From the IMG/VR virus record IMGVR_UViG_3300037042_006844, positions 124,001 to 188,000 of that record: a stretch of 64,000 bases of DNA, one strand, 5' to 3'. This document shows positions 18,560 to 60,719 of the stretch, one piece after another. Position numbers and translations under genes: made by a program. The first letter of the stretch is position 1. Each line of letters opens with the position of its first letter. The notes beneath the pieces were generated by a model. It was not told where the DNA came from and did no database searches. It worked only from the letters and a program-made list of their open reading frames with translations.

Positions 18560-18901
18560 ATGAAACGCATTCTTTTTTCTATGGCTCTGGTTGCAACCGC
18601 ATTGGTGGGGTGTGCCTCACATGAAACCACGGAGTCTCCCCAGCCCCCATCTACTGTGATTTACTATTATGATCCAATGCCCCCTTCGATGTGGATATAC
18701 GAGTCACGTTTTTATCGCCACACACCCAGACCGGGTGTTGTTGTAGCAAGACCTCCGCATCGTGAGCCGCCACATGGGCATGATGATCACAGAGTTGCAC
18801 CAACACCACCAATACCACCACCCGTCAAGGCACCTCCAGTGCATAACAACAACAAAATGCAGCCCCAGCCCGCAAATCGCATACATAATAGCGAGCGTTG
18901 A
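18560..18901 (+). CDS. Pro-rich lipoprotein
   Basis: lipobox LVGC; TATTTAT upstream. Confidence 0.65.
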   Translation: MKRILFSMALVATALVGCASHETTESPQPPSTVIYYYDPMPPSMWIYESRFYRHTPRPGVVVARPPHREPPHGHDDHRVAPTPPIPPPVKAPPVHNNNKMQPQPANRIHNSER

Positions 18902-18932
18902 CAAATTGAGGTGGTTGTGTTAAGATAGTTAA

Positions 18933-18988
18933 ATGGTCGGAATTCCTCCTCTTGGCTAAAGCCGAAGAGGTTTCCTTCCTCCAAAAAT
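18933..18988 (-). mobile_element. solo IS200/IS605 end hairpin remnant
   Basis: cctcttggctaaagccgaagaggtttcc hairpin, resembling ends at 24640-24670; related copy at 40168. Confidence 0.7.
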
Positions 18989-20967: not shown

Positions 20968-21315
20968 GTCAACAACCCCTAGGCTAAAGCCATAGGGGCT
21001 TGAAAGACACCGAGCTTTCTCAGTGATTTACATTCATTTGGCGAATTGACTGTCGCCTGCCCATCAAGTATGTTTCCATACGAGACGGGAAGTTTGGAAC
21101 GATTTCCTATGTTCCGTGCAGCATTTAAGTCTGCATCATACACAATCCCACTCTTCGCATAAAACCTACAACCTCTACGCACACCCTCTTTGATACCACT
21201 AAAACTATCAATTTGAGAAGTGTAAGCAGGGCTAACTAGAATAACATTTTTTCCAATGTTTTCTGCCTTGTAAGTTAATATTCTGCGAAGTTCAAATAAT
21301 GGAACTTGTGCTATA
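20968..21315 (-). mobile_element. tnpB: truncated IS200/IS605 element, tnpB 3' remnant
   Basis: LTYKA..G..V..V.PAYTSQ, DADLNAARNI; end gtcaacaacccctaggctaaagccataggggc. Confidence 0.85.
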
Positions 21316-21671: not shown

Positions 21672-23282
21672 ATGAAAAAACTAGTAAAATGCCCGCCCCT
21701 GCCGAGAATGGCGAAATCGCTGCAAAATACAGATCATGATCCATACACAGCAACCGCCGATATTATTGATAACAGCATCGATGCTGATGCTACAACAATA
21801 AAACTGGATGTTTGCGTGGAAAATAAAGAATTTGTTGTTAGAATTATCGACGATGGATTTGGTATGGATGTGGACGGCTTGCTTGCGGCAATGACTTATG
21901 GCGATCATCGATCTGGAGATGGTGGTCATGGCAAGTTTGGTTTGGGGTTAAAAACTTCCGCAACCAGTATAGGTAATCGATTTGAAGTCCACACAAGAGA
22001 CGAAGACGGCAAAATTCTTCGAGGTAGTTTTGATGTGGACGAGCTTATCGCCGAAGAGGACCCTGACCATCAGTGGGAACATGAAATTAGCGATGAAATT
22101 GGCGACGAAGACGTTTTGTGGTTCAATGAATGTGTGGGGACTGGAACTGGAACAATAGTCACTATAACAAAAATCGACCGAACTAATGCGTCTCAATTTG
22201 CAACGCGTATGAAACAGCATTTGGGACAAGTTTACCGTAACTATTTGGCACCTTCAAAAGATGCAACTATTCCGGGTAAAATCAAAATGTATGTCAATAA
22301 TGCTCTGATTTATGCAGTAGACCCGCTGCTTCGGCATATACCATCCACAAAACCGTATGAAATTCCAATTGAGCTTGCTCCTGGAGAAGTGGTTCACGCA
22401 ACTATAGTCAAACTTGGTAAACTTGAAGCTGAATCAGATAAAGTCGTCGATGAAAATGATGATGACTACCAAAATAATCTCAACACAAATATTCGGAATC
22501 AAGGTGTATATGTCATGAGAAATGATCGGGAGATCATGTCGGCTGATAAAAAGGTGTTTGCGTTTACTTGGCCTGGAAAAGGACACAACAGTATGAATTA
22601 TATTCGAGTGGAATTAGCATATAGTTCAGAACTGGATAAACATTTTCAGCTAAACCATAATAAAACCGCTATTCAAATCCCAAGTCAGAGTATCCGAGAT
22701 AAAATCAAAAGTGCTTTAGTTAATCCGATTAAAGAAATTAAAAGGCAGATAGACGAAGAAAAAGCCGCCGTTCCAGATGGTAAAATGCAGGAAATATTTG
22801 ATGCCATCAATGCTACCCTAATTGAAAAACGGAGAACTCTTATTCTTCCAAAAGGAAAGAGCGAGACCCGTCAGCCGAGCGGCGGAACCAACAATTCTGG
22901 GTCTATACAACCGAAAAACAGTGGCAGGAAAAGAGGCGTGGGGAGCAATCCCAATTTGAATCGAAAAGAAATTGTTCCAACTATCGGTGTTGTTTCCAAC
23001 GGAAAGGGCGGCGCAATATTCGAATACGGACTCAATCTTGATGACGGCAAGCCCGATCAAATGTATGTTAATTGGAACACAGATCATCCATTTTATCAAA
23101 AATTTGTGATTAACCACGCCCCCGATCAACTGATTGCGACGACATATTTGATAATTGGATTAGCAGCCGCATTTCAAATGGAACAGGGCAATTGTTGTTC
23201 TGATGAAAACGACAAATTGGTCGATAATTTGATGGAGAGAATTTCTACCGCCATATCTCAAAATATGAGAACATTATCCTAA
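21672..23282 (+). CDS. MORC-like GHKL ATPase
   Basis: DIIDNSIDA, DDGFGM, GKFGLGLK, GTGT; S5-like QGVYVMRNDREI; NTDHPFY. Confidence 0.85.
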   Translation: MKKLVKCPPLPRMAKSLQNTDHDPYTATADIIDNSIDADATTIKLDVCVENKEFVVRIIDDGFGMDVDGLLAAMTYGDHRSGDGGHGKFGLGLKTSATSIGNRFEVHTRDEDGKILRGSFDVDELIAEEDPDHQWEHEISDEIGDEDVLWFNECVGTGTGTIVTITKIDRTNASQFATRMKQHLGQVYRNYLAPSKDATIPGKIKMYVNNALIYAVDPLLRHIPSTKPYEIPIELAPGEVVHATIVKLGKLEAESDKVVDENDDDYQNNLNTNIRNQGVYVMRNDREIMSADKKVFAFTWPGKGHNSMNYIRVELAYSSELDKHFQLNHNKTAIQIPSQSIRDKIKSALVNPIKEIKRQIDEEKAAVPDGKMQEIFDAINATLIEKRRTLILPKGKSETRQPSGGTNNSGSIQPKNSGRKRGVGSNPNLNRKEIVPTIGVVSNGKGGAIFEYGLNLDDGKPDQMYVNWNTDHPFYQKFVINHAPDQLIATTYLIIGLAAAFQMEQGNCCSDENDKLVDNLMERISTAISQNMRTLS

Positions 23283-23303
23283 ACAATTAGACTATAGAAC
23301 ACA

Positions 23304-23336
23304 AAGCCCAGAGGAAACATCTTCTGGGCTTTTTTA
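23304..23336 (+). terminator. rho-independent terminator
   Basis: aaagcccaga...tctgggcttt + T-run. Confidence 0.7.
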
Positions 23337-23408
23337 TGCCCATGTGTCGGCACGCTGAAAATTCGTCAGAGCAGTTGACATTTTATAGAACCGTGGTAAG
23401 ATATAAGT

Positions 23409-24685
23409 GTCAATTGACACACGACCCTAAAGGGTCGGTGCTTGCCAGAGAAGAACCTCTGACGATTGGTTGATTGACAGCAACCTGTCCATCGAGTGCG
23501 GAGCACGAGATGGAGTGTTCTTTGTCATATCTAAAAGTGATATTGTTCGCAGCATTTAGGTCTGCGTCCAATACGACTTTATCAAGTCCATAATACCTAC
23601 ATCCTTTACGGACTCCGTTATCAAGACCACGATGGTCTAATTGGGATGTCCAGTGCGGATTAACGATGACCACTTGTTTTCCAAGTGATGCTGCCTTGTA
23701 GGTCAATATGTTCCTGAGAAGGAAATATGGCATTTGTGAATTGCGATTATTAAATCTTCGTCCTTTGAACTTGGATTTAATCTTGGTCAAATCCTCAATC
23801 ACAATGGTATTTGCCTTTGTGGTGAGAAGATGATTTACAACATTGTGTATGTAGTTCTTTGAAAAATGGTGTTCACGTCTGCGGAGTTTGGTTTGCTTAA
23901 CTCTGGTAGAATGTGATTTGTGAGATTGGAGTTTTCTCTTGTTCCAACGTATCTTACGTTTGGTTCGGTTAAACTCATTGCCTTTGATGATAATGCCTTC
24001 ACTGGTAGAAGCAAGTCGTTTGAGTCCCAAATCAACTCCAATACATTTTTTGTTGTCTTGGAATGTTGTGGTATCGTCAAATACAATAGAGAGGAACACT
24101 CTATCGTCTCTTACAAAAAGAGAAGGGTCTTTGAGTTTGTATTTTGAAAATAATTCGTTGACCTTATTATACTTGAGAAGTTTGGCAGTGATACGACCAT
24201 TACAAGTTGTCAGTTTAATGGCGTCTTGACCAATCCAAGTATAGATGCGAGTGTCCAGTTGGATGTTTAGTCGGTTTGTCTCAACTGGTTCTGTGATTTT
24301 ATGGCAATTGGAACGAAGAGATTTGTATTTTGCAACCACGTCTTGTTCTGCCTTAATGACAAACTGACTTGGAAGCATTGGAAGTTGTTCTCGAACCATC
24401 TTATAACATCTTTGGTGAAGAGGCATAAGACCATTACAGGACTTCATTCCAAATCGGATTTTAGATATGATATTGAAAGCATCACGTTTCAACGATAGTG
24501 ATTTGATGAGAGATTGTTTATCCTCATCATTTTCAAAAATCAGTTGAACATTGTATGTTTTCATTATTACTGGATATACATATTGTGAAGAAACAGAAAA
24601 CAACAAACTATTTTGAGAAAGTGAGATATTTTCGTTGCTCCTCCCCTACCCTAAAGGGATAGGGGTTTCCGCAACGAGTGAGAAT
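23409..24685 (-). mobile_element. IS200/IS605-family tnpB-only element
   Basis: end hairpins gaccctaaagggtc and cccctaccctaaagggatagggg; lies between promoter 23375-23402 and RNA ligase ATG. Confidence 0.85.
23410..24564 (-). CDS. tnpB: TnpB RNA-guided nuclease lacking the CxxC Zn finger
   Basis: RuvC GVDLG, IEDL, DADLNAA. Confidence 0.9.
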   Translation of the reverse strand: MKTYNVQLIFENDEDKQSLIKSLSLKRDAFNIISKIRFGMKSCNGLMPLHQRCYKMVREQLPMLPSQFVIKAEQDVVAKYKSLRSNCHKITEPVETNRLNIQLDTRIYTWIGQDAIKLTTCNGRITAKLLKYNKVNELFSKYKLKDPSLFVRDDRVFLSIVFDDTTTFQDNKKCIGVDLGLKRLASTSEGIIIKGNEFNRTKRKIRWNKRKLQSHKSHSTRVKQTKLRRREHHFSKNYIHNVVNHLLTTKANTIVIEDLTKIKSKFKGRRFNNRNSQMPYFLLRNILTYKAASLGKQVVIVNPHWTSQLDHRGLDNGVRKGCRYYGLDKVVLDADLNAANNITFRYDKEHSISCSALDGQVAVNQPIVRGSSLASTDPLGSCVN

Positions 24686-25792
24686 ATGAAGATAGACATT
24701 TCAGCAATTGACCGCTCACAATTTATGGTGCATGAGCATGTTGTGAACGGCGAGGTCGTTTATTTGGTTCACCCAAAAAATATGGGAGTAAAATGGACTA
24801 ATGACAATATACATTTGAGATCGAGTATATGGGACAGCGATGGCAATTTGGTGAGTGCCAGCTTCAAAAAATTCACCAACTGGGGAGAGAATCCTGAGAA
24901 TTTTCCTGTTCCAGAGTCGTTGCGAAACGCATGTGTTGTGGAGAAGCTCGACGGAAGCACTTTAATTGTCAGTAAGTATAAGGGCAATTATATTCTTAGA
25001 ACCCGTGGAACCACAGATGCTGCCAAACTGGACAATGGTTATGAGTTGGAGCAGTTTAAGCAGACCATTTTGCCTAAACTGTTGGATGTTCATTTGGTTG
25101 CTGGAGATACGTGGAAGTATTCATTCTTGTTTGAGTGGGTCAGTCCCGTAAACAAAATTGTATTAAACTACGGAGATTCTCCAGACTGGTTTTTGATCGG
25201 TATCATTTATCATGGGGACTATTCTTTGATTGATCAACTTACGTTGGACAATTTAGCTTGGCAACATGGTTTGAAACGCCCAACTGTTTACAGCTTTCCA
25301 ACCATTGAGCAATTATTGAAGGATGTTGATGCTTGGAAGCTCAAGGAGGGCGTGGTCGTTTACAGCAATCGTGATCAAATGCTGCACAAAGTCAAGGGGG
25401 CGTGGTATCTTGCATTGCACCACATGAAGAGCGAGTTGGCGAGTGTTGAGAAAGTGATGGATGTTTGGTTGGATCAAAACATGCCTACATACAATGCTTT
25501 TTATGATTACATTGCGACCACGTTCGATTTTGAGTTGGCAGAGCAGTGCCGTGGAACCATCAGCAATCTTTGTGATGCTCGTAAAGAGGTTGATAAGATT
25601 GTTGCTGCGATGGCAGATTTCGTGGAGTCGAAAGTGCGTTGTCTGCCGTCACGCAAAGAGCAAGCACAGCTTGTATTGGGTTCTTATGGTAACACCAACC
25701 GTTCGGCGTATGTGTTCGCACTACTCGACGGCAAGACGCTAACTAAAGATCAATACAAGAAATTGATGTTCCAAGTAATAATGAAAAAGTGA
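24686..25792 (+). CDS. RNA ligase (T4 Rnl1-like)
   Basis: KFTNWGE, EKLDGS, FEWVSP.NKIV, EGVV, KVK. Confidence 0.85.
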   Translation: MKIDISAIDRSQFMVHEHVVNGEVVYLVHPKNMGVKWTNDNIHLRSSIWDSDGNLVSASFKKFTNWGENPENFPVPESLRNACVVEKLDGSTLIVSKYKGNYILRTRGTTDAAKLDNGYELEQFKQTILPKLLDVHLVAGDTWKYSFLFEWVSPVNKIVLNYGDSPDWFLIGIIYHGDYSLIDQLTLDNLAWQHGLKRPTVYSFPTIEQLLKDVDAWKLKEGVVVYSNRDQMLHKVKGAWYLALHHMKSELASVEKVMDVWLDQNMPTYNAFYDYIATTFDFELAEQCRGTISNLCDARKEVDKIVAAMADFVESKVRCLPSRKEQAQLVLGSYGNTNRSAYVFALLDGKTLTKDQYKKLMFQVIMKK

Positions 25793-25802
25793 ACACAAAA
25801 CA

Positions 25803-25835
25803 AAAGCCCCACCGAGAAATTGGTGGGGCTTTTTT
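25803..25835. terminator. bidirectional terminator
   Basis: aaagccccacc...ggtggggcttt. Confidence 0.75.
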
Positions 25836-38713: not shown

Positions 38714-40111
38714 ATGAATAAAAACATCTGTTTAACTACTGACAGCTACAAGCTAAACCATTGGAATCAATACCCTCGTAACACCGAGATTGTGTATAGT
38801 TATTTCGAGTGTCGCAAAGGAGCAACCTTCGCCGAAACCCCGTTCTTCGGGCTTCAATACATTATTAAAAGCCACCTTGAGGGCGCAGTCGTGACCAGGG
38901 AGAATATTGAGAAGGCAGCTAGGCTTTGCAAATTCCATTTTGGCGACGAGCGTTACTTCAACCGTGAGGGCTGGGAATACATCCTCAATAATTGGGGAGG
39001 TAAACTTCCAGTCGTTATCAAGGCTGTTGAGGAGGGAACTGTGGTTCCGGTCAACAACGTGTTGATGACCATTGAGAATGTGGGCGGTGCCATGACGGCT
39101 TGGCTCACCAATTTCCTTGAGACGATTTTGTCCCAAGTATGGTATCCCACAACCGTTGCAGCTTTGAGCCGTGAGGTCAAAAAGAATATCAAAGAATATC
39201 TTGATTTAACCAGTGAGGGCGGACTGCTCAATTTCGGACTGCATGATTTTGGGTTCCGGGGGGCATCGTCTTGGGAATCTGCTGGTATTGGTGGTGCGGC
39301 TCATCTAATCAACTTCCTTGGCACCGATACTTTGGTCGCGATGGAGGTCGCCATGAACTATTACAATGCAAACCTCGAAGGATTAGCATACAGTGTGGCA
39401 GCAACCGAGCACAGTGTGATGACTGCTTTGGGCAAGGACGGTGAGGAAACGGTCGTCGAGAATCTGCTCAATGAATATCCCACGGGTATTCTTTCTGTGG
39501 TCTCCGATAGCTACGACATCTACAATTTTGTTAACAACATCGTTGGACGCAAATTTAAGGATTGGATTCTTGAGCGTGATGGTGTGTTCGTGGTTAGACC
39601 AGATTCCATTACTCCGAGCCATCCAACTCCTGAGCAGGAAATGGTTTGGATTATGTGGAGTCTTTGGGACAATTTTGGTGGCATTATAAACAGCAAGGGA
39701 TTTAATGTTATCAATCCCAAGGTTCGTGTTCTTTGGGGCGATGGAATCGATTTGGAAGGTATCAAAAAGATTCTGTGTGCTGTTGCCGATGCTGGATTTG
39801 CAACCGAAAATATCGCATGTTTCGGAATGGGTGGCGGACTCTTACAGAAAGTCAATCGTGATACACAGCGTTGTGCATTCAAATCGTCTGCACAGTATCG
39901 CAACGGTCAGTGGTTTGATATTTTCAAGAGTCCCAAGGATATTTCCAAGGCTTCCAAAAAGGGCAAGCTCAAGCTCACCAAGATTGACGGCAAGTTCGTT
40001 ACTGTTGGTGAAAACGATCCCGGTGAGGATTATTTGAAGGTTGTGTTTACGAATGGTGTGCTGGTCAAGGAAATTGACTTTGCAACCGTTCGCAAGAACG
40101 CTGCTCTATGA
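38714..40111 (+). CDS. nadV: nicotinamide phosphoribosyltransferase
   Basis: TDSYK, LHDFGFRG, ATEHS, SVVSDSYD, RPDS, GDGI, FGMGG.L. Confidence 0.95.
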   Translation: MNKNICLTTDSYKLNHWNQYPRNTEIVYSYFECRKGATFAETPFFGLQYIIKSHLEGAVVTRENIEKAARLCKFHFGDERYFNREGWEYILNNWGGKLPVVIKAVEEGTVVPVNNVLMTIENVGGAMTAWLTNFLETILSQVWYPTTVAALSREVKKNIKEYLDLTSEGGLLNFGLHDFGFRGASSWESAGIGGAAHLINFLGTDTLVAMEVAMNYYNANLEGLAYSVAATEHSVMTALGKDGEETVVENLLNEYPTGILSVVSDSYDIYNFVNNIVGRKFKDWILERDGVFVVRPDSITPSHPTPEQEMVWIMWSLWDNFGGIINSKGFNVINPKVRVLWGDGIDLEGIKKILCAVADAGFATENIACFGMGGGLLQKVNRDTQRCAFKSSAQYRNGQWFDIFKSPKDISKASKKGKLKLTKIDGKFVTVGENDPGEDYLKVVFTNGVLVKEIDFATVRKNAAL

Positions 40112-40155
40112 ACTACCCACCCGCTAAAGCAGGCGGGTTTTCTGCTCCCACAAAG
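40108..40155 (-). mobile_element. 48-bp internally deleted mini-IS (both ends of the 59406-60706 family fused)
   Basis: atgaactacccacc.gctaaagcagg.gggtt matches 59406; ttctgctccc.caaag matches 60691-60706. Confidence 0.85.
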
Positions 40156-40167
40156 ATAAAATTGTGA

Positions 40168-40213
40168 AAATGGTCGGAATTCCTCCCCTTAGGGGTTTCC
40201 TTCCTCCAAAACT
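40168..40213 (-). mobile_element. solo IS end remnant with shortened hairpin
   Basis: aatggtcggaattcctcc...ggtttccttcctccaaaa shared with 18933. Confidence 0.7.
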
Positions 40214-43803: not shown

Positions 43804-46134
43804 CTATCCTCTTCCAACAGTTGTTATTGGGTATGACGTAATTCTCGCCCAGTCTATATCGAATTGTCGAACAGTAACAATGGTCGGCCAAATTTGGATA
43901 CCAAATTGATATCCCGTGGTTGCTGGCATGATATATGAACTGGTTCCGTATTGAATGCCATCGATCAAATAATGCATTTTGTTTGTAACGTTGTTTCTGA
44001 CCAATTGGAATTTATGCCAGCCATCATCACCAGCCGATCCACTTCCGTATTTCACAGACGTTGGGAATGATTGATTGATGCTGGCACTTCGCGCAGCATA
44101 TCTCCAAGAACCAGTGATGGACCCCACCGATCCAGTTCTTTCAAAATAAAATCCTCTGACTACCCCTGTTGCCAATATATCACTAAACAATCCGACTCGC
44201 ATTATATGATCTGGGGCTGTTTGAACATTTCTCATAATGGTTTCAAATGATCTAAAATCGCCCCATGCAATATGCATCGGTTGGGTTGGTGCCGCTATAA
44301 GCCCTGGTGTAAACGCACTCGGTGTAGTTGTGGAAGTGCTGCTTTGCCTTCTCAACACACCAGGATGCCCCAGCGTTGAACTTAGCGTGGGAAGCATTGT
44401 TCCGTTATATATATTCCAACCATCATAGACTTGGTCTGCCGACTGGTGCGCCGATAAAAATTCCCAAGATATATCTACAAGTCTGCTGGTATCTCTATAC
44501 CCCAACAAATAGCTAGCTGACGTGGCATTTGTGGCGGTTGTTGTGCTTGTTGCACTGGCAGCTTTCACTGCCCAACTGCTTGTGATTGGATACGTAGAAG
44601 CAGAAAGCAATCCTTTTTGATAATACGATCCGTGCTGACCATCGAGTTTATCAGAATCACTGGAATAGCTGCTGAAGCTTGCGGACGTTACATGTTGCGC
44701 CCAACTGCTTGTTATTGGATACGTTGAGGCTGTGTGCAGCGTTGTTCCACCTCCTGGTGCCCAACTTGCACTACGGGCATTTTCAGCCCAGCTTGAGGTA
44801 AACGGATATGTCGAACCAGTATGCAGTGTCGTGCCGCCTCCACTTGATGGTGCCCAACTTGCACTACGTGCTTGATTTGCATAGCTGGCAGTTCCAGCAA
44901 ATAATGATGCAGTAATTACTGAACAACTTATATGCCCCGCAACGTCCAGTGTATTTACTGGGTTGCTGACTCCTATACCAACTTTTCCGTTTGGTTGTGG
45001 TTGCCCAGTAGTCCCAGGAGTATTTGCGAATATAACATTGGCAATGTTTGTTTGATCTGGCGCAGTGTTTATGGCTCCTCGACCAATTGCAATGCTGTTA
45101 CCATACCCTCCTGTCGATGTATAATCTCCGATCAAAATTGAAGAGGAATTTCCCGCCGAGTTATTAACCGTGTCAGTCTGACCCGCTGCATAACCTATGA
45201 AAATGCTGTTATTTGCTGTAGTAGCCCCCGATCCAGCCCACGTTCCGATGAAATTGCTATTCAAAGCTCCAGTCGCCGAATCCCCTGCCGAATATCCAAT
45301 GAAATTGCTGTTGTATGCATTTGAAGCATTAGCACCAGCAAAGTATCCAATGAAATTGCTTTCATATGCGTTTATTGCATTAACACCCGCTCTGTCACCG
45401 ATGAAATTACTACGTGCGGCATGATCAGCACTAGAGCCAGCAAAGTATCCAATGAAATTACTGTCGCCCGCATCGGTTGAGAATTTTCCCGCTTTATATC
45501 CAATGAAATTGCTGGCTCTGACACTACCAGATGCGCCATATCCCGTTTGATATCCTATAAAATTGCACTCCATGGCATCGGGGGCATTATATCCAGAACC
45601 ACTTCCAATAAAATTGCTTTTGACGGGAGCACTTCCTGTATTGCTGACGATGTGCCCAATTAATATCAGATTTCCAGCAATACTGGCTCCCGTATTAATT
45701 TGAAGACCGTTGTTTGGAGAAATCGATGCGGATGCACTTCCACTTATGATTTTGGATGGATCGCCGCCGCCAGGTGCCCAACTTGCACTGTGGGCATGGC
45801 TTGAACTATGAGCATGGCTTGCACTGTGGGCATGGCTTGCACTACGAGCATAACTAGATGATGTCGCATTATCGGCTTTCAAAGCATGGCTTGCACTGTG
45901 TGCGTGGCTTGAGCTTCTTGCCCAGCTTGCACTGTGTGCATGGCTTGAGCTTCTAGCATAGCTCGCCGACACAGCGTTTCTTGCCCAACTGCTTGTGATC
46001 GGGTATGATGAACCAGTGCGAATTCCTGGTAGATTTACCGAATTGCCGAGTCCGTCATAATAGCTAGCCGATGCTATTTGCACCAACCGTCCATATGTGG
46101 TTGATATTTGCTTTCCTAGTAAAGAATAGTTCAT
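43804..46134 (-). CDS. fibre-like virion protein with SASWA and SNFIG repeats
   Basis: YPITSSWA/SASHA repeats, 17-aa SNFIGxxAG repeats, GKVGIGVSNP..LDV.G. Confidence 0.7.
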   Translation of the reverse strand: MNYSLLGKQISTTYGRLVQIASASYYDGLGNSVNLPGIRTGSSYPITSSWARNAVSASYARSSSHAHSASWARSSSHAHSASHALKADNATSSSYARSASHAHSASHAHSSSHAHSASWAPGGGDPSKIISGSASASISPNNGLQINTGASIAGNLILIGHIVSNTGSAPVKSNFIGSGSGYNAPDAMECNFIGYQTGYGASGSVRASNFIGYKAGKFSTDAGDSNFIGYFAGSSADHAARSNFIGDRAGVNAINAYESNFIGYFAGANASNAYNSNFIGYSAGDSATGALNSNFIGTWAGSGATTANNSIFIGYAAGQTDTVNNSAGNSSSILIGDYTSTGGYGNSIAIGRGAINTAPDQTNIANVIFANTPGTTGQPQPNGKVGIGVSNPVNTLDVAGHISCSVITASLFAGTASYANQARSASWAPSSGGGTTLHTGSTYPFTSSWAENARSASWAPGGGTTLHTASTYPITSSWAQHVTSASFSSYSSDSDKLDGQHGSYYQKGLLSASTYPITSSWAVKAASATSTTTATNATSASYLLGYRDTSRLVDISWEFLSAHQSADQVYDGWNIYNGTMLPTLSSTLGHPGVLRRQSSTSTTTPSAFTPGLIAAPTQPMHIAWGDFRSFETIMRNVQTAPDHIMRVGLFSDILATGVVRGFYFERTGSVGSITGSWRYAARSASINQSFPTSVKYGSGSAGDDGWHKFQLVRNNVTNKMHYLIDGIQYGTSSYIMPATTGYQFGIQIWPTIVTVRQFDIDWARITSYPITTVGRG

Positions 46135-46162
46135 ATTTAGAGTCAGTGTGTATATATAATTA

Positions 46163-48727
46163 TCAATAATATCTTCCGTCCACAAACGAATTTCCTGCGG
46201 TGCTACCTGGGAAATAACTTGCCCCAGCACCACCACTGTTTATAATTGCAAACGAGTTGGCATTGTATCGTTGTCCAGATGCGGTTCCAACCCATGTAAT
46301 TCCTGGAGCATACACAACGCCAAAAGTATCGGCTGCGCAAAACCATGCTGTGAACGCAAGAGACCCAACTAAAGTAACTGTCCAACCACCATCAGCACTG
46401 ACTGTGGCACTGTTTGAAGCATACCAGTGTCCCAACCCTCCAGCAACAATACTATAACTTCCCCCAAGTCTCACATTTGCTCCGAACAGTGATGCTATAT
46501 GCAAACTTCCAGCGGGAACCGTTCCAAACCGAATGCCCGCCCCAGTCGCAACTGTTGTATATGGTCCTGATGCATAAATACAATGTTGTGTGGTGGATCT
46601 TAATTCCATATTTTGGAACACGAATTTTCCGAACACGTTTGCCGCATATATCGAATTTTTGCCAGCAGCAGGAGAACCAGAGAGAATGACATTTGCGGGA
46701 GTTCCAGAATTTCCATTAAATATTACTCGCCCCGATCCAACAACGTTTGACAGATTTACAGTCTGCGCATATGTTCCATCTGCCAATTGAACCGTTACGT
46801 CGTATATTCCAGTATCAATTGACGAAACTACATCCATTGCTTTCTGCAAAGTTGCAAATGGAGCACCGACTGTCAATCCATTGTTTGAATCGTTGCCAGT
46901 TGTGCTAACATAATATGTTCTTTCCGCCAGCAACACTGTGCGAGTCGTTGCCGATGTTGGTGCTGGAGCATATGATGCTGATACGGCATTTCTAGCCCAA
47001 CTGCTTGTTATTGGATATGTGCTGCCAGTGCGAAGTGTTGATCCTCCACCCCCACCACTGCTTGGTGCCCAACTTGCACTACGAGCTTGTTTTGCATAAC
47101 TTGCTGTGCCAGCAAACAATGATGCGGACACAACCGTCGCCGATATGTTTCCGGCCACATCCAATGCATTAACTGGGTTGCTGACTCCTATACCAACTCT
47201 ACCGTTGGATTGAACAGAGCCAGTTGTTGTGGTGCCAGTATAAATACCCGTTGCGAACAACACATTTCCAATGCTCACTTGTTCTGGTAGAGTATTTTGA
47301 ACTCCCTGACCAATCGCAATGCTGTTGCTGTTACCACCAGTTGACGTAAAATCACCAATCAGTATTGAAGATTTTCCTATCACTGAGTTATCAACGATAT
47401 CAGCGTAACCTGCACTATAACCTATGAAAATACTGTTGTTGGCTTTGGGTGCGTTAACACCACACCAACGACCAATGAAATTGCTGTATGATGCGCTTAC
47501 TGAGTTCTGTCCAGCAGCAAATCCTATGAAATTGCTGTTATTGGCTTCGGTTGCTTCAGAGCCAGCACTGACACCTATAAAATTGCTTTCATATGCATTT
47601 ACAGCCCAGTTGCCCGAACCCATTCCAATAAAATTGCTGCTGTGGGCATTGGTGGCTTGTGATCCAGCACCCGCTCCAAAAAAATTACTGTTTGTGGCAC
47701 TGACGGCGTTGATGCCAGCACTATTTCCCATGAAGTTGGAAAACGAGGCTTCAGCAGCATTGATACCAGCCCAAATTCCAATAAAATTGCTGTTTTCAGC
47801 ATTTGTTGCTGCTTCGCCAGCTTGTGTTCCAATGAAATTGCTGTTGTTGGCGTTTGCTGCTTGATTTCCAGCACCGGCACCAACAAAATTGCTATATACC
47901 GCATATACTGCTTGATTTCCAGCACCATCTCCAACAAAATTGCTATGGTGGGCATATGATGCGCTGAGTCCAGCTTCATAGCCCAACAAATTGGTATTGG
48001 CTGGAGGAGTTTTTGTGTTGACGATATAACCAGTTATCAATACATCCCCTTCAAAACTTGCAGATGTGTTGACTTGCAAGCCCCCAGCTGGCGAAATCGA
48101 GGCTGATACGCTGCCATTGATAATTCTGGTTGGTTCACCGCTACCACCCGGTGCCCAGCTTGCACTTCGAGCGTGGTTTGCATAACTGGATGATGATGCG
48201 TTTGAACTGATATTGATCAGCATTTTTCCAGCCGTTGTGTGTTGGTATAAACAATATCCAACCACAGTTGGCACTGCGTTTCCATCTGGGGGAGTCAATG
48301 AGTATCTACCAGGAGTTGTTCCGCTCAAATACAATAATGACCCAGCCGAATAGCCCGATGTATTGACATCATTGACTTGACCTTGGGCTGTAACGTATCC
48401 TTTGCTTGCACTGAGAATATTTTGAGCAGCTACACCAGCAACGTTGTATTTCTTCGTAACACCATCACTGATTGCTTTGAAACCGATTGGGTATGTTAGC
48501 AAAGACCCCGACAGTGTTATAGCATCACCCGCAGAAATATTTTCGCCAGCATAAATTTGCCCAAGGGTCTCTTGACCAATTTTCAACGTCAATCCAGATT
48601 GATCGTTGTATACGGCGTATGTGTGGTTATCTTTGTCCCAAAACAGCAACCCTTCTTGCCATGCAGGTTTTGTTGCATTGGTAGCCGCTTGGATATACGA
48701 ATTCTGATCTATTTGAAAAATGTGCAT
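46163..48727 (-). CDS. fibre-like virion protein with beta-helix-like C-terminus
   Basis: same repeats; YYVSTTGNDSNNG..PFATLQKA..LADGTY; TATTTAT upstream. Confidence 0.75.
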   Translation of the reverse strand: MHIFQIDQNSYIQAATNATKPAWQEGLLFWDKDNHTYAVYNDQSGLTLKIGQETLGQIYAGENISAGDAITLSGSLLTYPIGFKAISDGVTKKYNVAGVAAQNILSASKGYVTAQGQVNDVNTSGYSAGSLLYLSGTTPGRYSLTPPDGNAVPTVVGYCLYQHTTAGKMLINISSNASSSSYANHARSASWAPGGSGEPTRIINGSVSASISPAGGLQVNTSASFEGDVLITGYIVNTKTPPANTNLLGYEAGLSASYAHHSNFVGDGAGNQAVYAVYSNFVGAGAGNQAANANNSNFIGTQAGEAATNAENSNFIGIWAGINAAEASFSNFMGNSAGINAVSATNSNFFGAGAGSQATNAHSSNFIGMGSGNWAVNAYESNFIGVSAGSEATEANNSNFIGFAAGQNSVSASYSNFIGRWCGVNAPKANNSIFIGYSAGYADIVDNSVIGKSSILIGDFTSTGGNSNSIAIGQGVQNTLPEQVSIGNVLFATGIYTGTTTTGSVQSNGRVGIGVSNPVNALDVAGNISATVVSASLFAGTASYAKQARSASWAPSSGGGGGSTLRTGSTYPITSSWARNAVSASYAPAPTSATTRTVLLAERTYYVSTTGNDSNNGLTVGAPFATLQKAMDVVSSIDTGIYDVTVQLADGTYAQTVNLSNVVGSGRVIFNGNSGTPANVILSGSPAAGKNSIYAANVFGKFVFQNMELRSTTQHCIYASGPYTTVATGAGIRFGTVPAGSLHIASLFGANVRLGGSYSIVAGGLGHWYASNSATVSADGGWTVTLVGSLAFTAWFCAADTFGVVYAPGITWVGTASGQRYNANSFAIINSGGAGASYFPGSTAGNSFVDGRYY

Positions 48728-59381: not shown

Positions 59382-59405
59382 GTATTTGACCTATAACTAT
59401 TTGCT

Positions 59406-60706
59406 ATGAACTACCCACCTGCTAAAGCAGGTGGGTTTCCACCGCAATAGTTATGAGTTTCTATCGGGTAGTTCCTACCCGTATTAAACGTTGTCTTTGG
59501 AAATGAGAAGTCCAAGATATTCTTGGCAGCATTCACATCTCTATCGTGTTTCTCATTACAATCTGGGCAAGTCCATTCTCTATCATTTAATGTAAGAGAA
59601 TGATTAACATATCCACAATGAGAACACGTCTTACTGGATGGTTCAAATCTACCTATTTTTAGGAAGTTCTTACCATACCAGTCGCTTTTATATTGGAGCA
59701 TATTTACAAATTTTCCCCAAGCATAATCTCCTATGAGTTTATTAGTTGGTGAATAGTTGTTCTTCTGCATCCCCCGAATGGTTAAATCCTCAATACAGAT
59801 ATTACCAATTTGGTTATCATTGGTTAGTTTGTATGAGAGTTTATCCAAGAAATCTTTGCGTTGTCTTGTTATTTTAGAATGGAGTTTGGTTATCTGCTCT
59901 TGCTTGGAGATATGAGCAGTAGAACCTTTAGTGAGTTGCTCCAAATCCTGTTGGTGTTTAGTAAGTTTATCAGCAGATTGTTTCAATACCTTCGGGTTCT
60001 CAATCTTTGTTCCATCATTCAGAGTAAGAAATGTTTTTACTCCAAAATCTATTCCTATTGCTTTATCCTTTTTTGGTGTTGGTTTCTTTGATAGTTCTTT
60101 TTCAACCTCTACAAGAATGGAAACATAGTATCGTTTATCTCTGTCTTGGGATACGATTGCTTGTTTAATCGTTCCTTCTGCTTGTCGGTCAAAGATACAT
60201 TTAATGCCTCCACGAAACTTTGGAATGACTAATCGCTTTCCATCATAGTTCAACTTAATGTTGTTATTAGTCATTGGGACAACGAACGATTTACGAGCAT
60301 ACTTCTTCGACTTAAACTTTGGAAATCCAGCATTGGAACGAAAGAAGGAAGTATATGCTCTATCCAAGTTGAGGATGGATTGCTGTAGCGATTGAGAACC
60401 TATCTCACTCAACCATTCATTTGTCTTTTTCAACTTTGGAAGTTCAGTTGCCATATCCTGCCAGTTCAATGTTTTCTTGGTTTCTTTGTAATGCTTAATC
60501 TTTACTTCAAGGAAATGGTTGTATATCCATCGGCAGTGTCCAAAATGCTTGGACAAAAGAACCTCTTGTTCCTTGGTAGGATATATTCTGTATTTGTAAG
60601 CAACGTTATACATTCTACAACATACATATCATTCACTTTCTAAAAACGATTAATTATTTTTCAATGGGTCGCATTCATCCCATATGGGGTTTCTGCTCCC
60701 TCAAAG
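59406..60706 (-). mobile_element. IS200/IS605-family tnpB-only element
   Basis: right-end hairpin acccacctgctaaagcaggtgggt; shortened left-end hairpin at 60665-60706. Confidence 0.88.
59411..60613 (-). CDS. tnpB: TnpB RNA-guided nuclease
   Basis: AYKYRIYP HTH, GIDFG, IEDL, CSHC/CPDC, DRDVNAA. Confidence 0.95.
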   Translation of the reverse strand: MYNVAYKYRIYPTKEQEVLLSKHFGHCRWIYNHFLEVKIKHYKETKKTLNWQDMATELPKLKKTNEWLSEIGSQSLQQSILNLDRAYTSFFRSNAGFPKFKSKKYARKSFVVPMTNNNIKLNYDGKRLVIPKFRGGIKCIFDRQAEGTIKQAIVSQDRDKRYYVSILVEVEKELSKKPTPKKDKAIGIDFGVKTFLTLNDGTKIENPKVLKQSADKLTKHQQDLEQLTKGSTAHISKQEQITKLHSKITRQRKDFLDKLSYKLTNDNQIGNICIEDLTIRGMQKNNYSPTNKLIGDYAWGKFVNMLQYKSDWYGKNFLKIGRFEPSSKTCSHCGYVNHSLTLNDREWTCPDCNEKHDRDVNAAKNILDFSFPKTTFNTGRNYPIETHNYCGGNPPALAGG

Positions 60707-60719
60707 ATAAATATAGTGG

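What the first reader, a model, noticed from the sequence alone, without database searches (positions are those of the whole stretch)
23375..24690. tnpB element inserted exactly between a leaderless promoter and the RNA ligase start codon
Seen: TTGACA-N16-TAAGAT-ataagt, then the element (23409-24685), then ATGAAG. Removing the element restores -10 + 6 nt + ATG, the geometry of other promoters here (27604, 31307, 40233). The solo ends at 18933 and 40168 also abut ATGAA. Known: IS200/IS605 elements insert next to a short motif that is also the TnpB TAM, and the omegaRNA guide is the flank beyond the right end. Inference: TAM about TTCAT (antisense of ATGAA), so the guide reads the promoter of the empty allele. 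This would be RNA-guided homing into gene starts that leaves coding sequences intact.
Basis: partly seen in the sequence, partly recalled or inferred. Interest (0 to 1): 0.78.

Follow-up and report, generated by a model that had tools for sequence, protein, structure and literature searches.

The report
Phage TnpB element at gene start
A 1.3-kb transposon that carries only an RNA-guided nuclease gene (tnpB, IS200/IS605 type) sits exactly between a phage promoter and the start codon of an RNA ligase gene, because its 5-base target TTCAT is the mirror image of the common gene start ATGAA; it is a new member of a known family, made useful by sibling phages that still show the clean empty sites.

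Summary
Window 23409-24685 is a 1277-bp tnpB-only IS200/IS605-type element. Its right end (RE) abuts TTGACA-N16-TAAGAT+6 nt. Its left end (LE) abuts the ATG of an intact RNA ligase gene.

- **Target:** fifteen independent insertions of this family all have TTCAT next to the LE.
- **Empty sites:** a sibling phage shows clean, duplication-free empty sites for two sister copies. One is a leaderless promoter +6 nt +ATGAA.
- **Guide RNA:** the last ~105 nt of the element form a conserved structure with strong covariation, like an omegaRNA scaffold. The predicted guide would read the -10 region.
- **Protein:** TnpB keeps its RuvC D-E-D residues and is under purifying selection.

- The nearest relative of this locus lacks the element. 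It has 569 bp there instead: a small ORF starting ATGAAAAAA plus the ligase's own promoter. The simple "promoter+ATG ligase" empty allele is seen only in distant relatives.
- Only about half of family insertions sit at real gene starts, as expected from TTCAT plus selection against gene disruption.
- The phage has no Y1 transposase. Autonomous relatives occur in other phages.
- Sister copies carry an outward promoter; this copy does not.

Homing is inferred, not shown.

The parts
23306..23335 (+). Intrinsic terminator of the upstream HATPase_c_3 gene (21672-23282): a GC hairpin followed by a T-run.
   Evidence: Read from the sequence. The only Rfam hit in the region is this terminator-like hairpin.
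23375..23402 (+). Sigma-70-like promoter TTGACA-N16-(TG)TAAGAT, now separated from any ATG by the element.
   Evidence: 10 of 12 matches, TG extension. The sequence is identical in the sibling phage L092/L093, where ATGAAAAAA follows 6 nt after it.
23389..23408 (-). Predicted omegaRNA guide template: the 20 nt just beyond the RE (ACTTATATCTTACCACGGTT on the - strand). It covers the -10 hexamer and part of the spacer.
   Evidence: Inferred from TnpB architecture (Karvelis 2021, PMC8612924; Meers 2023 preprint, read). Its only perfect match in the genome is this flank, which is preceded by TTGAC rather than TTCAT.
23409..23445 (-). Right end (RE): terminal ...GTCAATTGAC plus a subterminal hairpin at 23420-23440 with a CTAAAG/CTTTAG loop.
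   Evidence: An identical RE with a different flank occurs in run X3.
23409..23514 (-). omegaRNA-like structured scaffold. It has four helices and overlaps the 3' end of tnpB and the RE.
   Evidence: The 14-sequence alignment A3 gives 27 pairs, 96.3% paired, 18 with compensatory changes. 0 of 500 shuffles reach this, and slid controls give 31-45% paired. No Rfam family matches.
23410..24564 (-). tnpB, 384 aa, with RuvC D178/E257/D335 intact. The zinc-finger cysteines are lost in this clade.
   Evidence: Pfam PF01385 and PF07282. PDB sequence hits to TnpB and Cas12f. Invariant columns in A2. dN/dS is 0.08-0.2.
24565..24685 (-). Left end (LE), 121 nt, with an imperfect hairpin at 24631-24676. 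No sigma-70-like outward promoter was detected.
24686..24690 (-). Target/TAM TTCAT on the element's strand, which equals ATGAA, the first codons of the ligase.
   Evidence: All 15 independent insertions have TTCAT here.
24686..25792 (+). RNA ligase gene (T4 Rnl1-like), 368 aa, intact. It is mosaic relative to the sibling phage.
   Evidence: Pfam. Full-length relatives.
18898..18988 (+). Solo LE of the sister subfamily: promoter 18898-18932 plus a 56-nt hairpin leader at 18933-18988. It lies directly before the ATGAAA of a CoaD/CoaE-like gene.
   Evidence: The 91 nt are identical to the LE of genome copy 2.
40170..40213 (+). Second solo LE, a loop-deleted variant, before ATGAAATGG. Only a 16-codon ORF follows.
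20975..21311 (-). Decayed copy of the same family: RE hairpin, scaffold remnant and the C-terminal third of tnpB.
   Evidence: tblastn. Sequence. PF07282 hit.

Best explanation
Window 23409-24685 is a non-autonomous member of the IS200/IS605 (OMEGA) family that carries only tnpB. It belongs to a clade that lives in large uncultured freshwater and sediment phages.

**Shown**
- The element has the family's anatomy: hairpin ends, no inverted repeats and no target duplication. The LE lies directly 3' of TTCAT and the RE ends in TTGAC.
- TnpB is nuclease-competent by sequence and under purifying selection.
- A covarying RNA scaffold occupies its 3' end.
- In sibling phages, sister copies are absent from otherwise 97.7-99.8% identical DNA, with exact junctions.

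**Inferred**
- A Y1 TnpA supplied in trans moves the element as single-stranded DNA into TTCAT sites. Related phage elements of the type tnpA-endonuclease VII-tnpB could be the source.
- TTCAT is the antisense of ATGAA, and this phage packs its genes tightly, many with leaderless promoters. The insertions that survive are therefore mostly those just 5' of start codons, and they leave coding sequences whole.
- TnpB loaded with an omegaRNA whose guide is the 16-20 nt beyond the RE (here the antisense of the -10 region) cuts genomes that carry TTCAT plus that sequence, meaning empty alleles of co-replicating or co-infecting phage genomes. Recombinational repair then copies the element in (homing).

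**History of this copy**
Both junctions coincide with gene-start TTCAT sites of the sibling phage: the start of the small ORF and the start of the ligase. The 569 bp between them is missing. The present arrangement therefore arose by insertion plus recombination or deletion, or in an ancestor that lacked that cassette.
For: **Identity**
- Pfam and PDB matches.
- D-E-D residues invariant.
- dN/dS of 0.08-0.2.

**Ends and target**
- TTCAT lies 5' of the LE in 15 of 15 independent sites, and the RE ends ...TGAC in every case but one (L082 ends TTTAC).
- The same autonomous element occurs at two different sites with the same boundaries, L076 and L078.

**Empty alleles**
- L096, L097 and L098 lack copies 3 and 4. 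The 1330-bp elements fit exactly between ...TATATTcagaga|ATGAAAAAA and ...TTAACAT|ATGAAAATT.
- Distant ligase orthologues show promoter +6 nt +ATGAAG with no insert.

**Other**
- Scaffold covariation.
- Y1 TnpA partners in relatives.
- TTCAT is an experimentally shown TAM in ISGst5.
- Mobility: an identical RE joined to another flank in a second sample.
Against: - There are no RNA data for an omegaRNA. The one metatranscriptome laid gave only unstranded contigs from relatives.
- There is no cleavage or transposition assay.
- The phage has no Y1 TnpA.
- The exact predicted empty junction for this copy was not found in IMG/VR or JGI metagenome contigs.
- The nearest relative has a different 569-bp segment in place of the element, so a simple insertion history is not demonstrated for this copy.
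- The ligase is a multi-patch mosaic rather than one conversion tract.
- No outward promoter lies in this LE, so how the ligase is expressed is unknown.
- The zinc-finger cysteines typical of TnpB are missing.
Confidence: 0.78

Rival explanations
1. The element is an immobile relic. It is kept only because removing it is not selected for, or because TnpB has been recruited by the phage for another job. On this view the presence/absence differences among sibling phages come from ordinary modular recombination, not from transposition or RNA-guided homing.
For: - The genome has no Y1 TnpA.
- The nearest relative differs by a cassette swap rather than a clean empty site.
- The adjacent ligase is a patchwork of recombined blocks.
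- Decayed copies and solo ends show that the family does erode here.
Against: - Copies 3 and 4 have exact, duplication-free empty sites at TTCAT in 97.7-99.8% identical DNA.
- An identical RE lies next to a different flank in another sample.
- The same autonomous element sits at two sites.
- Purifying selection acts on TnpB, and the RNA scaffold shows covariation.
Confidence: 0.12
2. The promoter at 23375 never belonged to the RNA ligase. The element entered at the start of the small Sel1-like ORF, as in the sibling arrangement. A later deletion, or recombination between two element copies at neighbouring TTCAT sites, removed that ORF and the ligase's own promoter. The restored 'promoter+6+ATG ligase' geometry would then be a by-product of two gene-start targets, not the true empty allele.
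For: - In sibling L092/L093 the promoter is identical through TAAGATata, and ATGAAAAAA follows at +6.
- The ligase there has its own TTGACT-N17-TACAAT +7 nt promoter.
- Both junctions of the window element map onto these two ATGAA sites.
Against: - Distant relatives have a promoter directly before the ligase. Its spacer and extended -10 (..gtggTAAnnT) resemble the 23375 promoter more than the sibling's ligase promoter.
- The sibling's small ORF is out of frame with its ATG (ATGAAAAAATAA) in two samples, so it could be the newcomer.
- The direction of change cannot be rooted with the data held.
Confidence: 0.4
3. The many TnpB-omegaRNA units act chiefly as weapons against competing phages (RNA-guided marker exclusion) rather than serving the element's own spread. 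Each guide targets the insert-free allele of a rival genome during co-infection.
For: - The genome holds at least 8 full-length TnpB genes.
- Empty alleles in sibling phages differ from the resident guides within the first 5 TAM-proximal positions in 3 of 3 comparisons. The chance of this, given flank divergence, is 1e-5, 0.011 and 0.11.
- The concept has been raised for phages and plasmids in the literature.
Against: - The sample is only three sites.
- One of the three (this locus) is confounded by the cassette difference.
- There are no functional data.
- This reading is mechanistically the same as homing, so it is more a matter of who benefits than a distinct mechanism.
Confidence: 0.25

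Closest known systems
IS200/IS605-family TnpB-omegaRNA elements (ISDra2, IS608, ISGst2)
   Same: TnpB with a RuvC D-E-D. Hairpin LE and RE without inverted repeats. Insertion 3' of a short motif that doubles as the TAM. A structured RNA overlapping the tnpB 3' end, with the guide lying beyond the RE. A Y1 TnpA partner in autonomous relatives.
   Different: - This copy is tnpB-only and resides in a large uncultured phage.
- Sequence similarity to solved TnpBs is weak, E about 1e-3 to 1e-6.
- The zinc-finger cysteines are lost.
- The scaffold matches no Rfam family.
- The motif is TTCAT rather than TTGAT, TTAC or TTTAT.
ISGst5 (IscB element of Geobacillus stearothermophilus)
   Same: The same pentanucleotide, TTCAT, serves as insertion motif and TAM, shown experimentally (Meers et al. 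preprint).
   Different: The nuclease there is IscB, not TnpB. The host is a bacterial chromosome. No link to leaderless gene starts has been described.
Free-standing homing endonucleases of T-even phages (Seg, Mob) and 'non-restorative transposon homing'
   Same: - The mobile nuclease gene sits between conserved phage genes and is present or absent among close relatives.
- The expected spread is by cutting the insert-free allele during co-infection.
- Plasmid evidence exists for TnpB, and the phage case has been theorised (PMC13565253; PMC11870625 listed).
   Different: Recognition here would be by RNA guide plus TAM rather than by protein. Neither cleavage nor co-conversion is demonstrated. 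The mosaic in the neighbouring ligase is patchy, not a single tract.
PATE/MITE derivatives of IS200/IS605
   Same: The solo and miniature hairpin elements (window 18933-18988 and 40170-40213; genome 216.4k and 225.7k) are end-only derivatives at the same TTCAT target.
   Different: Several are single-hairpin forms, either the LE alone or RE-left/LE-right chimeras. The sister-subfamily LE carries an outward promoter.
TldR (nuclease-dead TnpB-like repressors that target promoters)
   Same: The guide would be complementary to a promoter region.
   Different: The RuvC residues are intact here. The resident promoter copy lacks the TAM. The element has transposon ends and is polymorphic.

Membership tests
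IS200/IS605 (OMEGA) TnpB element | TnpB protein with OrfB_IS605 and TNB domains and a RuvC D-E-D catalytic triad | tested here: met
   PF01385 and PF07282 both score above their cut-offs. D178, E257 and D335 are invariant in 8 sequences. PDB hits are to TnpB and Cas12f.
IS200/IS605 (OMEGA) TnpB element | Asymmetric ends with subterminal hairpins, no terminal inverted repeats and no target-site duplication | tested here: met
   LE hairpin at 24631-24676 and RE hairpin at 23420-23440. Filled versus empty comparison of sister copies shows exact insertion with no duplication.
IS200/IS605 (OMEGA) TnpB element | Insertion immediately 3' of a conserved 4-5 nt motif that abuts the LE (equal to the TAM) | tested here: met
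   TTCAT at 15 of 15 independent sites and in both empty sites. TAM function itself was not assayed.
IS200/IS605 (OMEGA) TnpB element | Y1 HUH transposase TnpA in the element | tested here: not met
   No PF01797 in the 303.6-kb genome. Relatives at 70-73% TnpB identity carry a Y1 TnpA. This copy is therefore a non-autonomous derivative, which is common in the family.
IS200/IS605 (OMEGA) TnpB element | omegaRNA: a structured RNA overlapping the tnpB 3' end and RE, with the guide beyond the RE | tested here: inconclusive
   The structure is strongly supported by covariation. Transcription, processing and the guide are not shown, and there is no Rfam match.
IS200/IS605 (OMEGA) TnpB element | RNA-guided, TAM-dependent dsDNA cleavage | not testable with these tools
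   This needs TAM-depletion or plasmid-interference assays.
IS607-type TnpB element | Adjacent serine recombinase TnpA and no hairpin ends | tested here: not met
   The only resolvase in the genome (genome 188982-189371) lies 40 kb away, beside a different tnpB. This element has hairpin ends.
Homing genetic element in phages | Presence/absence polymorphism at the same site among near-identical genomes | tested here: inconclusive
   Met for sister copies 3 and 4. For this copy the sibling lacks the element but has 569 bp of other DNA instead.
TldR (nuclease-dead TnpB repressor) | Loss of RuvC catalytic residues and loss of transposon ends | tested here: not met
   The D-E-D triad is intact, and both LE and RE are present.
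IStron | Group I intron fused to the IS, so that the insertion is spliced out of RNA | tested here: not met
   No intron family among Rfam matches at E<=1 over 23300-24800.

The most novel reading that the evidence does not exclude
A phage-resident radiation of TnpB elements may use TTCAT, the antisense of ATGAA, so that the 5' edges of leaderless and tightly packed genes act as safe-harbour sites.

On this reading:
- The elements spread between co-infecting phage genomes by omegaRNA-guided cutting of insert-free alleles.
- One subfamily carries its own outward promoter of the host-phage type plus a 56-nt leader. This replaces the native promoter it displaces.
- Insert-free alleles that persist in sibling phages carry TAM-proximal guide mismatches, the footprint of an ongoing drive-and-escape conflict.
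Probability: 0.35. Interest if true: 0.75.

Novelty: new member of a known kind. Interest (0 to 1): 0.55.

Why it matters
TnpB's natural role as a homing or retention nuclease has been shown in bacteria and on plasmids. For phages it has only been theorised.

This phage lineage offers a natural test bed:
- several diverged TnpB copies in one genome;
- exact filled and empty alleles in sibling phages from public metagenomes;
- predicted guides and a predicted TAM that can be synthesised and assayed directly.

It also shows how a 5-nt target that mirrors the commonest gene start lets a transposon live in a 90%-coding genome without breaking genes. A sister subfamily even brings a replacement promoter. 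The TnpBs are compact (384 aa), lack the usual zinc finger and lie far from characterised enzymes, which may interest genome-editing work.

Tried and rejected
- **Megablast of the locus against GenBank phages:** no match. Protein-level matches are below 30% identity, so there is no cultured relative and no host clue.
- **Scan of 185,579 bacterial and archaeal species genomes with the TnpB alignment:** no relative found. The first attempt failed for lack of conserved stretches.
- **Exact and degenerate searches for the predicted empty junction:** nothing in IMG/VR. The one metagenome hit was an unrelated chance match.
- **Laying four public runs:** the source contig was confirmed, and an identical RE was found at another site, but no contig spans an empty allele. 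The RNA run gave only short unstranded pieces from relatives.
- **Leaderless mini-ORF idea:** the 56-nt mini begins ATGGTCGG, which could encode MVGIPPLG*. Rejected, because the ATG is not conserved (ATA, GTG or absent in other copies).
- **Outward promoter as the old tnpA promoter:** not supported. Autonomous relatives show no such promoter before tnpA.
- **Single co-conversion tract next to the LE:** weakened. Ligase identity to the sibling alternates between 95-100% and 43-85% blocks.
- **Kin search for the virus record, and access to the rest of the sibling contig:** neither is offered by the tools.
- **Orthologues of the gene behind the 18933 solo end in IMG/VR:** none found.
Full report
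**Where the window lies.** The window is bases 124001-188000 of a 303,564-bp IMG/VR virus record with 41% G+C, estimated 89% complete. No cultured phage is close. Megablast finds nothing, and protein matches are below 30% identity.

**The observation.** Every element of the finding is present at the stated coordinates:
- TTGACA at 23375-23380, a 16-nt spacer, then TAAGAT at 23397-23402 with an upstream TG, then six bases;
- a 1277-bp insert at 23409-24685;
- ATGAAG at 24686, opening a 368-aa ORF that matches T4-type RNA ligase (PF09511).

The insert encodes a 384-aa protein on the minus strand (24564..23413) with the OrfB_IS605 and Cas12f1-like TNB domains. The promoter is the best sigma-70-like match in the region.

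Leaderless geometry is a real property of this genome. The source run holds the whole stretch in one contig.

**What the insert is.** Both ends carry subterminal hairpins with a CTAAAG/CTTTAG loop (LE at 24631-24676, RE at 23420-23440). There are no terminal inverted repeats.

The genome contains three more full-length copies of the same family, at 58, 41 and 39% amino-acid identity. It also holds a decayed copy inside the window (about 20975-21311) and several TnpB genes of other types.

The 5.8-billion-protein collection holds 818 relatives at E<=1e-10, many on long phage-like contigs. From these and from IMG/VR I collected 15 independent insertion sites. Every one has TTCAT immediately 5' of the LE on the tnpB strand, and all but one RE (L082, TTTAC) end in ...TGAC.

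Two relatives are autonomous: tnpA (Y1, PF01797) - endonuclease VII - tnpB, and tnpA - tnpB. The first occurs at two different sites with identical boundaries. The window's phage has no Y1 transposase. This copy is therefore a non-autonomous IS200/IS605-type element.

The RuvC residues D178, E257 and D335 are invariant, while the usual zinc-finger cysteines are replaced. dN/dS across the family is 0.08-0.2.

**The guide RNA.** The last ~105 nt of the element (window 23514 to 23409, minus strand) align across 14 family members. They fold into four helices and overlap the C-terminal coding region and the RE.
- 96.3% of cells are paired.
- 18 of 27 pairs show compensatory changes.
- 0 of 500 column shuffles reach the observed values.
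- Sliding the partners drops pairing to 31-45%.

This is what an omegaRNA scaffold should look like. No Rfam family matches it.

By the established architecture, the guide would be the 16-20 nt beyond the RE: ACTTATATCTTACCAC..., the antisense of the -10 hexamer and spacer. Its only perfect match in the genome is the resident flank, which is preceded by TTGAC, not TTCAT. Transcription and cleavage are not shown.

**Empty alleles of sister copies.** A sibling phage (loci L096-L098) encodes an identical UvdE protein and is 97.7-99.8% identical in DNA. It lacks copies 3 and 4.
- At one site it reads TTGACA-N16-TATATT-cagaga directly followed by ATGAAAAAA. At the other it reads ...TTAACAT followed by ATGAAAATT.
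- In the window's genome, 1330-bp elements sit exactly at those points, with no duplication.

It also shows that the outward promoter and 56-nt hairpin leader found in the LE of copies 2-4, and in two other relatives, are part of the inserted DNA. That subfamily replaces the promoter it displaces. The copy under study has no such promoter, and how its ligase is expressed is open.

**The empty allele of this locus.** Sixty ligase orthologues at 52-65% identity mostly show TTGAC(T/A)-N16-17-TAAnnT +6 nt +ATGAA(G/A)ATTGAC with no insert.

The closest relative tells a more complicated story (L092/L093). Its left flank is 99.89% identical over 1832 bp, and downstream DNA is 98.96% identical over 2502 bp.
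- It has the same promoter through TAAGATata.
- It has no element.
- In its place are 569 bp: gat + ATGAAAAAATAA..., a small Sel1-like ORF that is out of frame with that ATG in two samples, and a second leaderless promoter 7 nt before the ligase ATG.

Both junctions of the window's element thus coincide with ATGAA/TTCAT sites of the sibling, but the DNA between them is missing. Two histories fit:
- the element entered at the small ORF's start and the cassette was later lost, for example by recombination between two copies at neighbouring targets.

The ligase gene itself is a patchwork relative to the sibling, with blocks of 95-100% and 43-85% identity (75% at the protein level). The locus is therefore a recombination hot spot, but there is no single conversion tract.

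Searches for the exact predicted junction found nothing.

**Are gene starts targeted?** In this genome, 8 LE or mini ends abut ORFs of 135-377 codons that begin ATGAA. Across the 15 family sites, only 6 to 8 do.

A rough census gives 1131 ATGAA sites: 87 at gene starts, 95 intergenic and 949 inside genes. Gene starts are 8% of all sites but 48% of non-disruptive ones, which matches the family-wide fraction. The motif plus selection against gene disruption is enough to explain the pattern. No extra start-codon sensing is needed.

**A suggestive detail.** In all three filled-versus-empty comparisons, the empty allele differs from the resident guide within the first five TAM-proximal positions:
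- this locus: agt versus gat;
- copy 3: position 1;
- copy 4: position 5.

Given flank divergence, the chances are about 1e-5, 0.011 and 0.11. The first case is confounded by the cassette difference. This could be escape from TnpB cutting, but three sites are too few to conclude.

**Comparison with the literature.**
- TnpB as an RNA-guided, TAM-dependent nuclease that biases transposon inheritance is established (PMC8612924; Meers et al. preprint).
- TTCAT is the proven TAM of ISGst5.
- TnpB branches in viruses have been catalogued (PMC10691335).
- Homing into co-infecting phages or plasmids has been proposed, with plasmid data (PMC13565253).
- I found nothing on TnpB elements at leaderless gene starts, or on LE-borne outward promoters in this family.

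**Verdict.** This is a new member of a known kind. Its value lies in the natural filled and empty alleles, the several diverged copies in one phage, and the promoter-carrying sister subfamily.

Noticed in passing
window 59411-60613 (- strand), ends about 59404-59440 and 60614-60712: A second full-length tnpB (400 aa) of a different subfamily. Its RE hairpin is cccacctgCTAAAGcaggtggg, and its LE ends ...ggggtttctgctccctcaaagat. The flanking motif differs from TTCAT.
   Followed up: partly
window 40100-40213: Two miniature hairpin elements lie back to back. The first is a single-hairpin RE-left/LE-right chimera of the second subfamily (40106 to about 40157). The second is the 44-nt LE of the promoter-carrying subfamily (40170-40213). 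They are followed by ATGAAATGG, which opens only a 16-codon ORF just before another promoter.
   Followed up: partly
window 20975-21311: A decayed copy of the family: RE hairpin, scaffold remnant and the C-terminal third of tnpB. Its RE also follows a promoter-like TTGACA-N17-ATAATT.
   Followed up: partly
genome 237356-238690, 266999-268390, 270538-271868 (loci L095, L094): Copies 2-4 carry, inside the LE, an outward TTGACA-N17-TAnnnT promoter and then a nearly identical 56-nt hairpin leader that runs up to the target gene's ATGAAA. The empty-site comparison shows this is part of the inserted DNA. Relatives L074 and L080 have the same layout, with compensatory changes in the hairpin.
   Followed up: yes
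genome 225700-225960 (locus L072) and 216389-216440: Miniature derivatives. The first is a roughly 250-nt element with RE, scaffold remnant and an LE whose stem carries compensatory changes, but no tnpB. The second is a single hairpin made of an RE left half and an LE right half. Both lie directly before long ORFs that start ATGAA.
   Followed up: partly
whole genome; genome 187868-189371 straddles the window's end: At least 8 full-length TnpB-like genes occur in one 304-kb phage. One lies beside a serine recombinase and is IS607-like. Fragments occur at 145.1k and 244.2k.
   Followed up: partly
loci L076 and L078, positions 1049-1504: Autonomous relatives carry a recombination endonuclease VII gene (PF02945) between tnpA and tnpB. 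This is an unusual passenger for an IS200/IS605 element.
   Followed up: no
window 24686-25825 versus L092 2405-3505: The RNA ligase is a multi-block mosaic relative to a sibling phage whose flanks are about 99% identical. Both alleles are intact.
   Followed up: partly
L092 1836-2311 and L093 131-606: The sibling's small Sel1-like secreted-looking ORF is out of frame with the leaderless ATG (ATGAAAAAATAA; one A fewer than needed). The same is seen in two independent samples. It could be a pseudogene or involve a slippery A-run.
   Followed up: no
whole genome, e.g. window 27604, 31307, 29213: Many genes have a sigma-70-like promoter with the ATG 6-9 nt after the -10, implying widespread leaderless mRNAs in this uncultured phage and its unknown host.
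   Followed up: partly
window 44500-48200: Large families of degenerate 18-nt and 51-nt direct repeats lie inside coding sequence, probably a repetitive structural or fibre protein.
   Followed up: no
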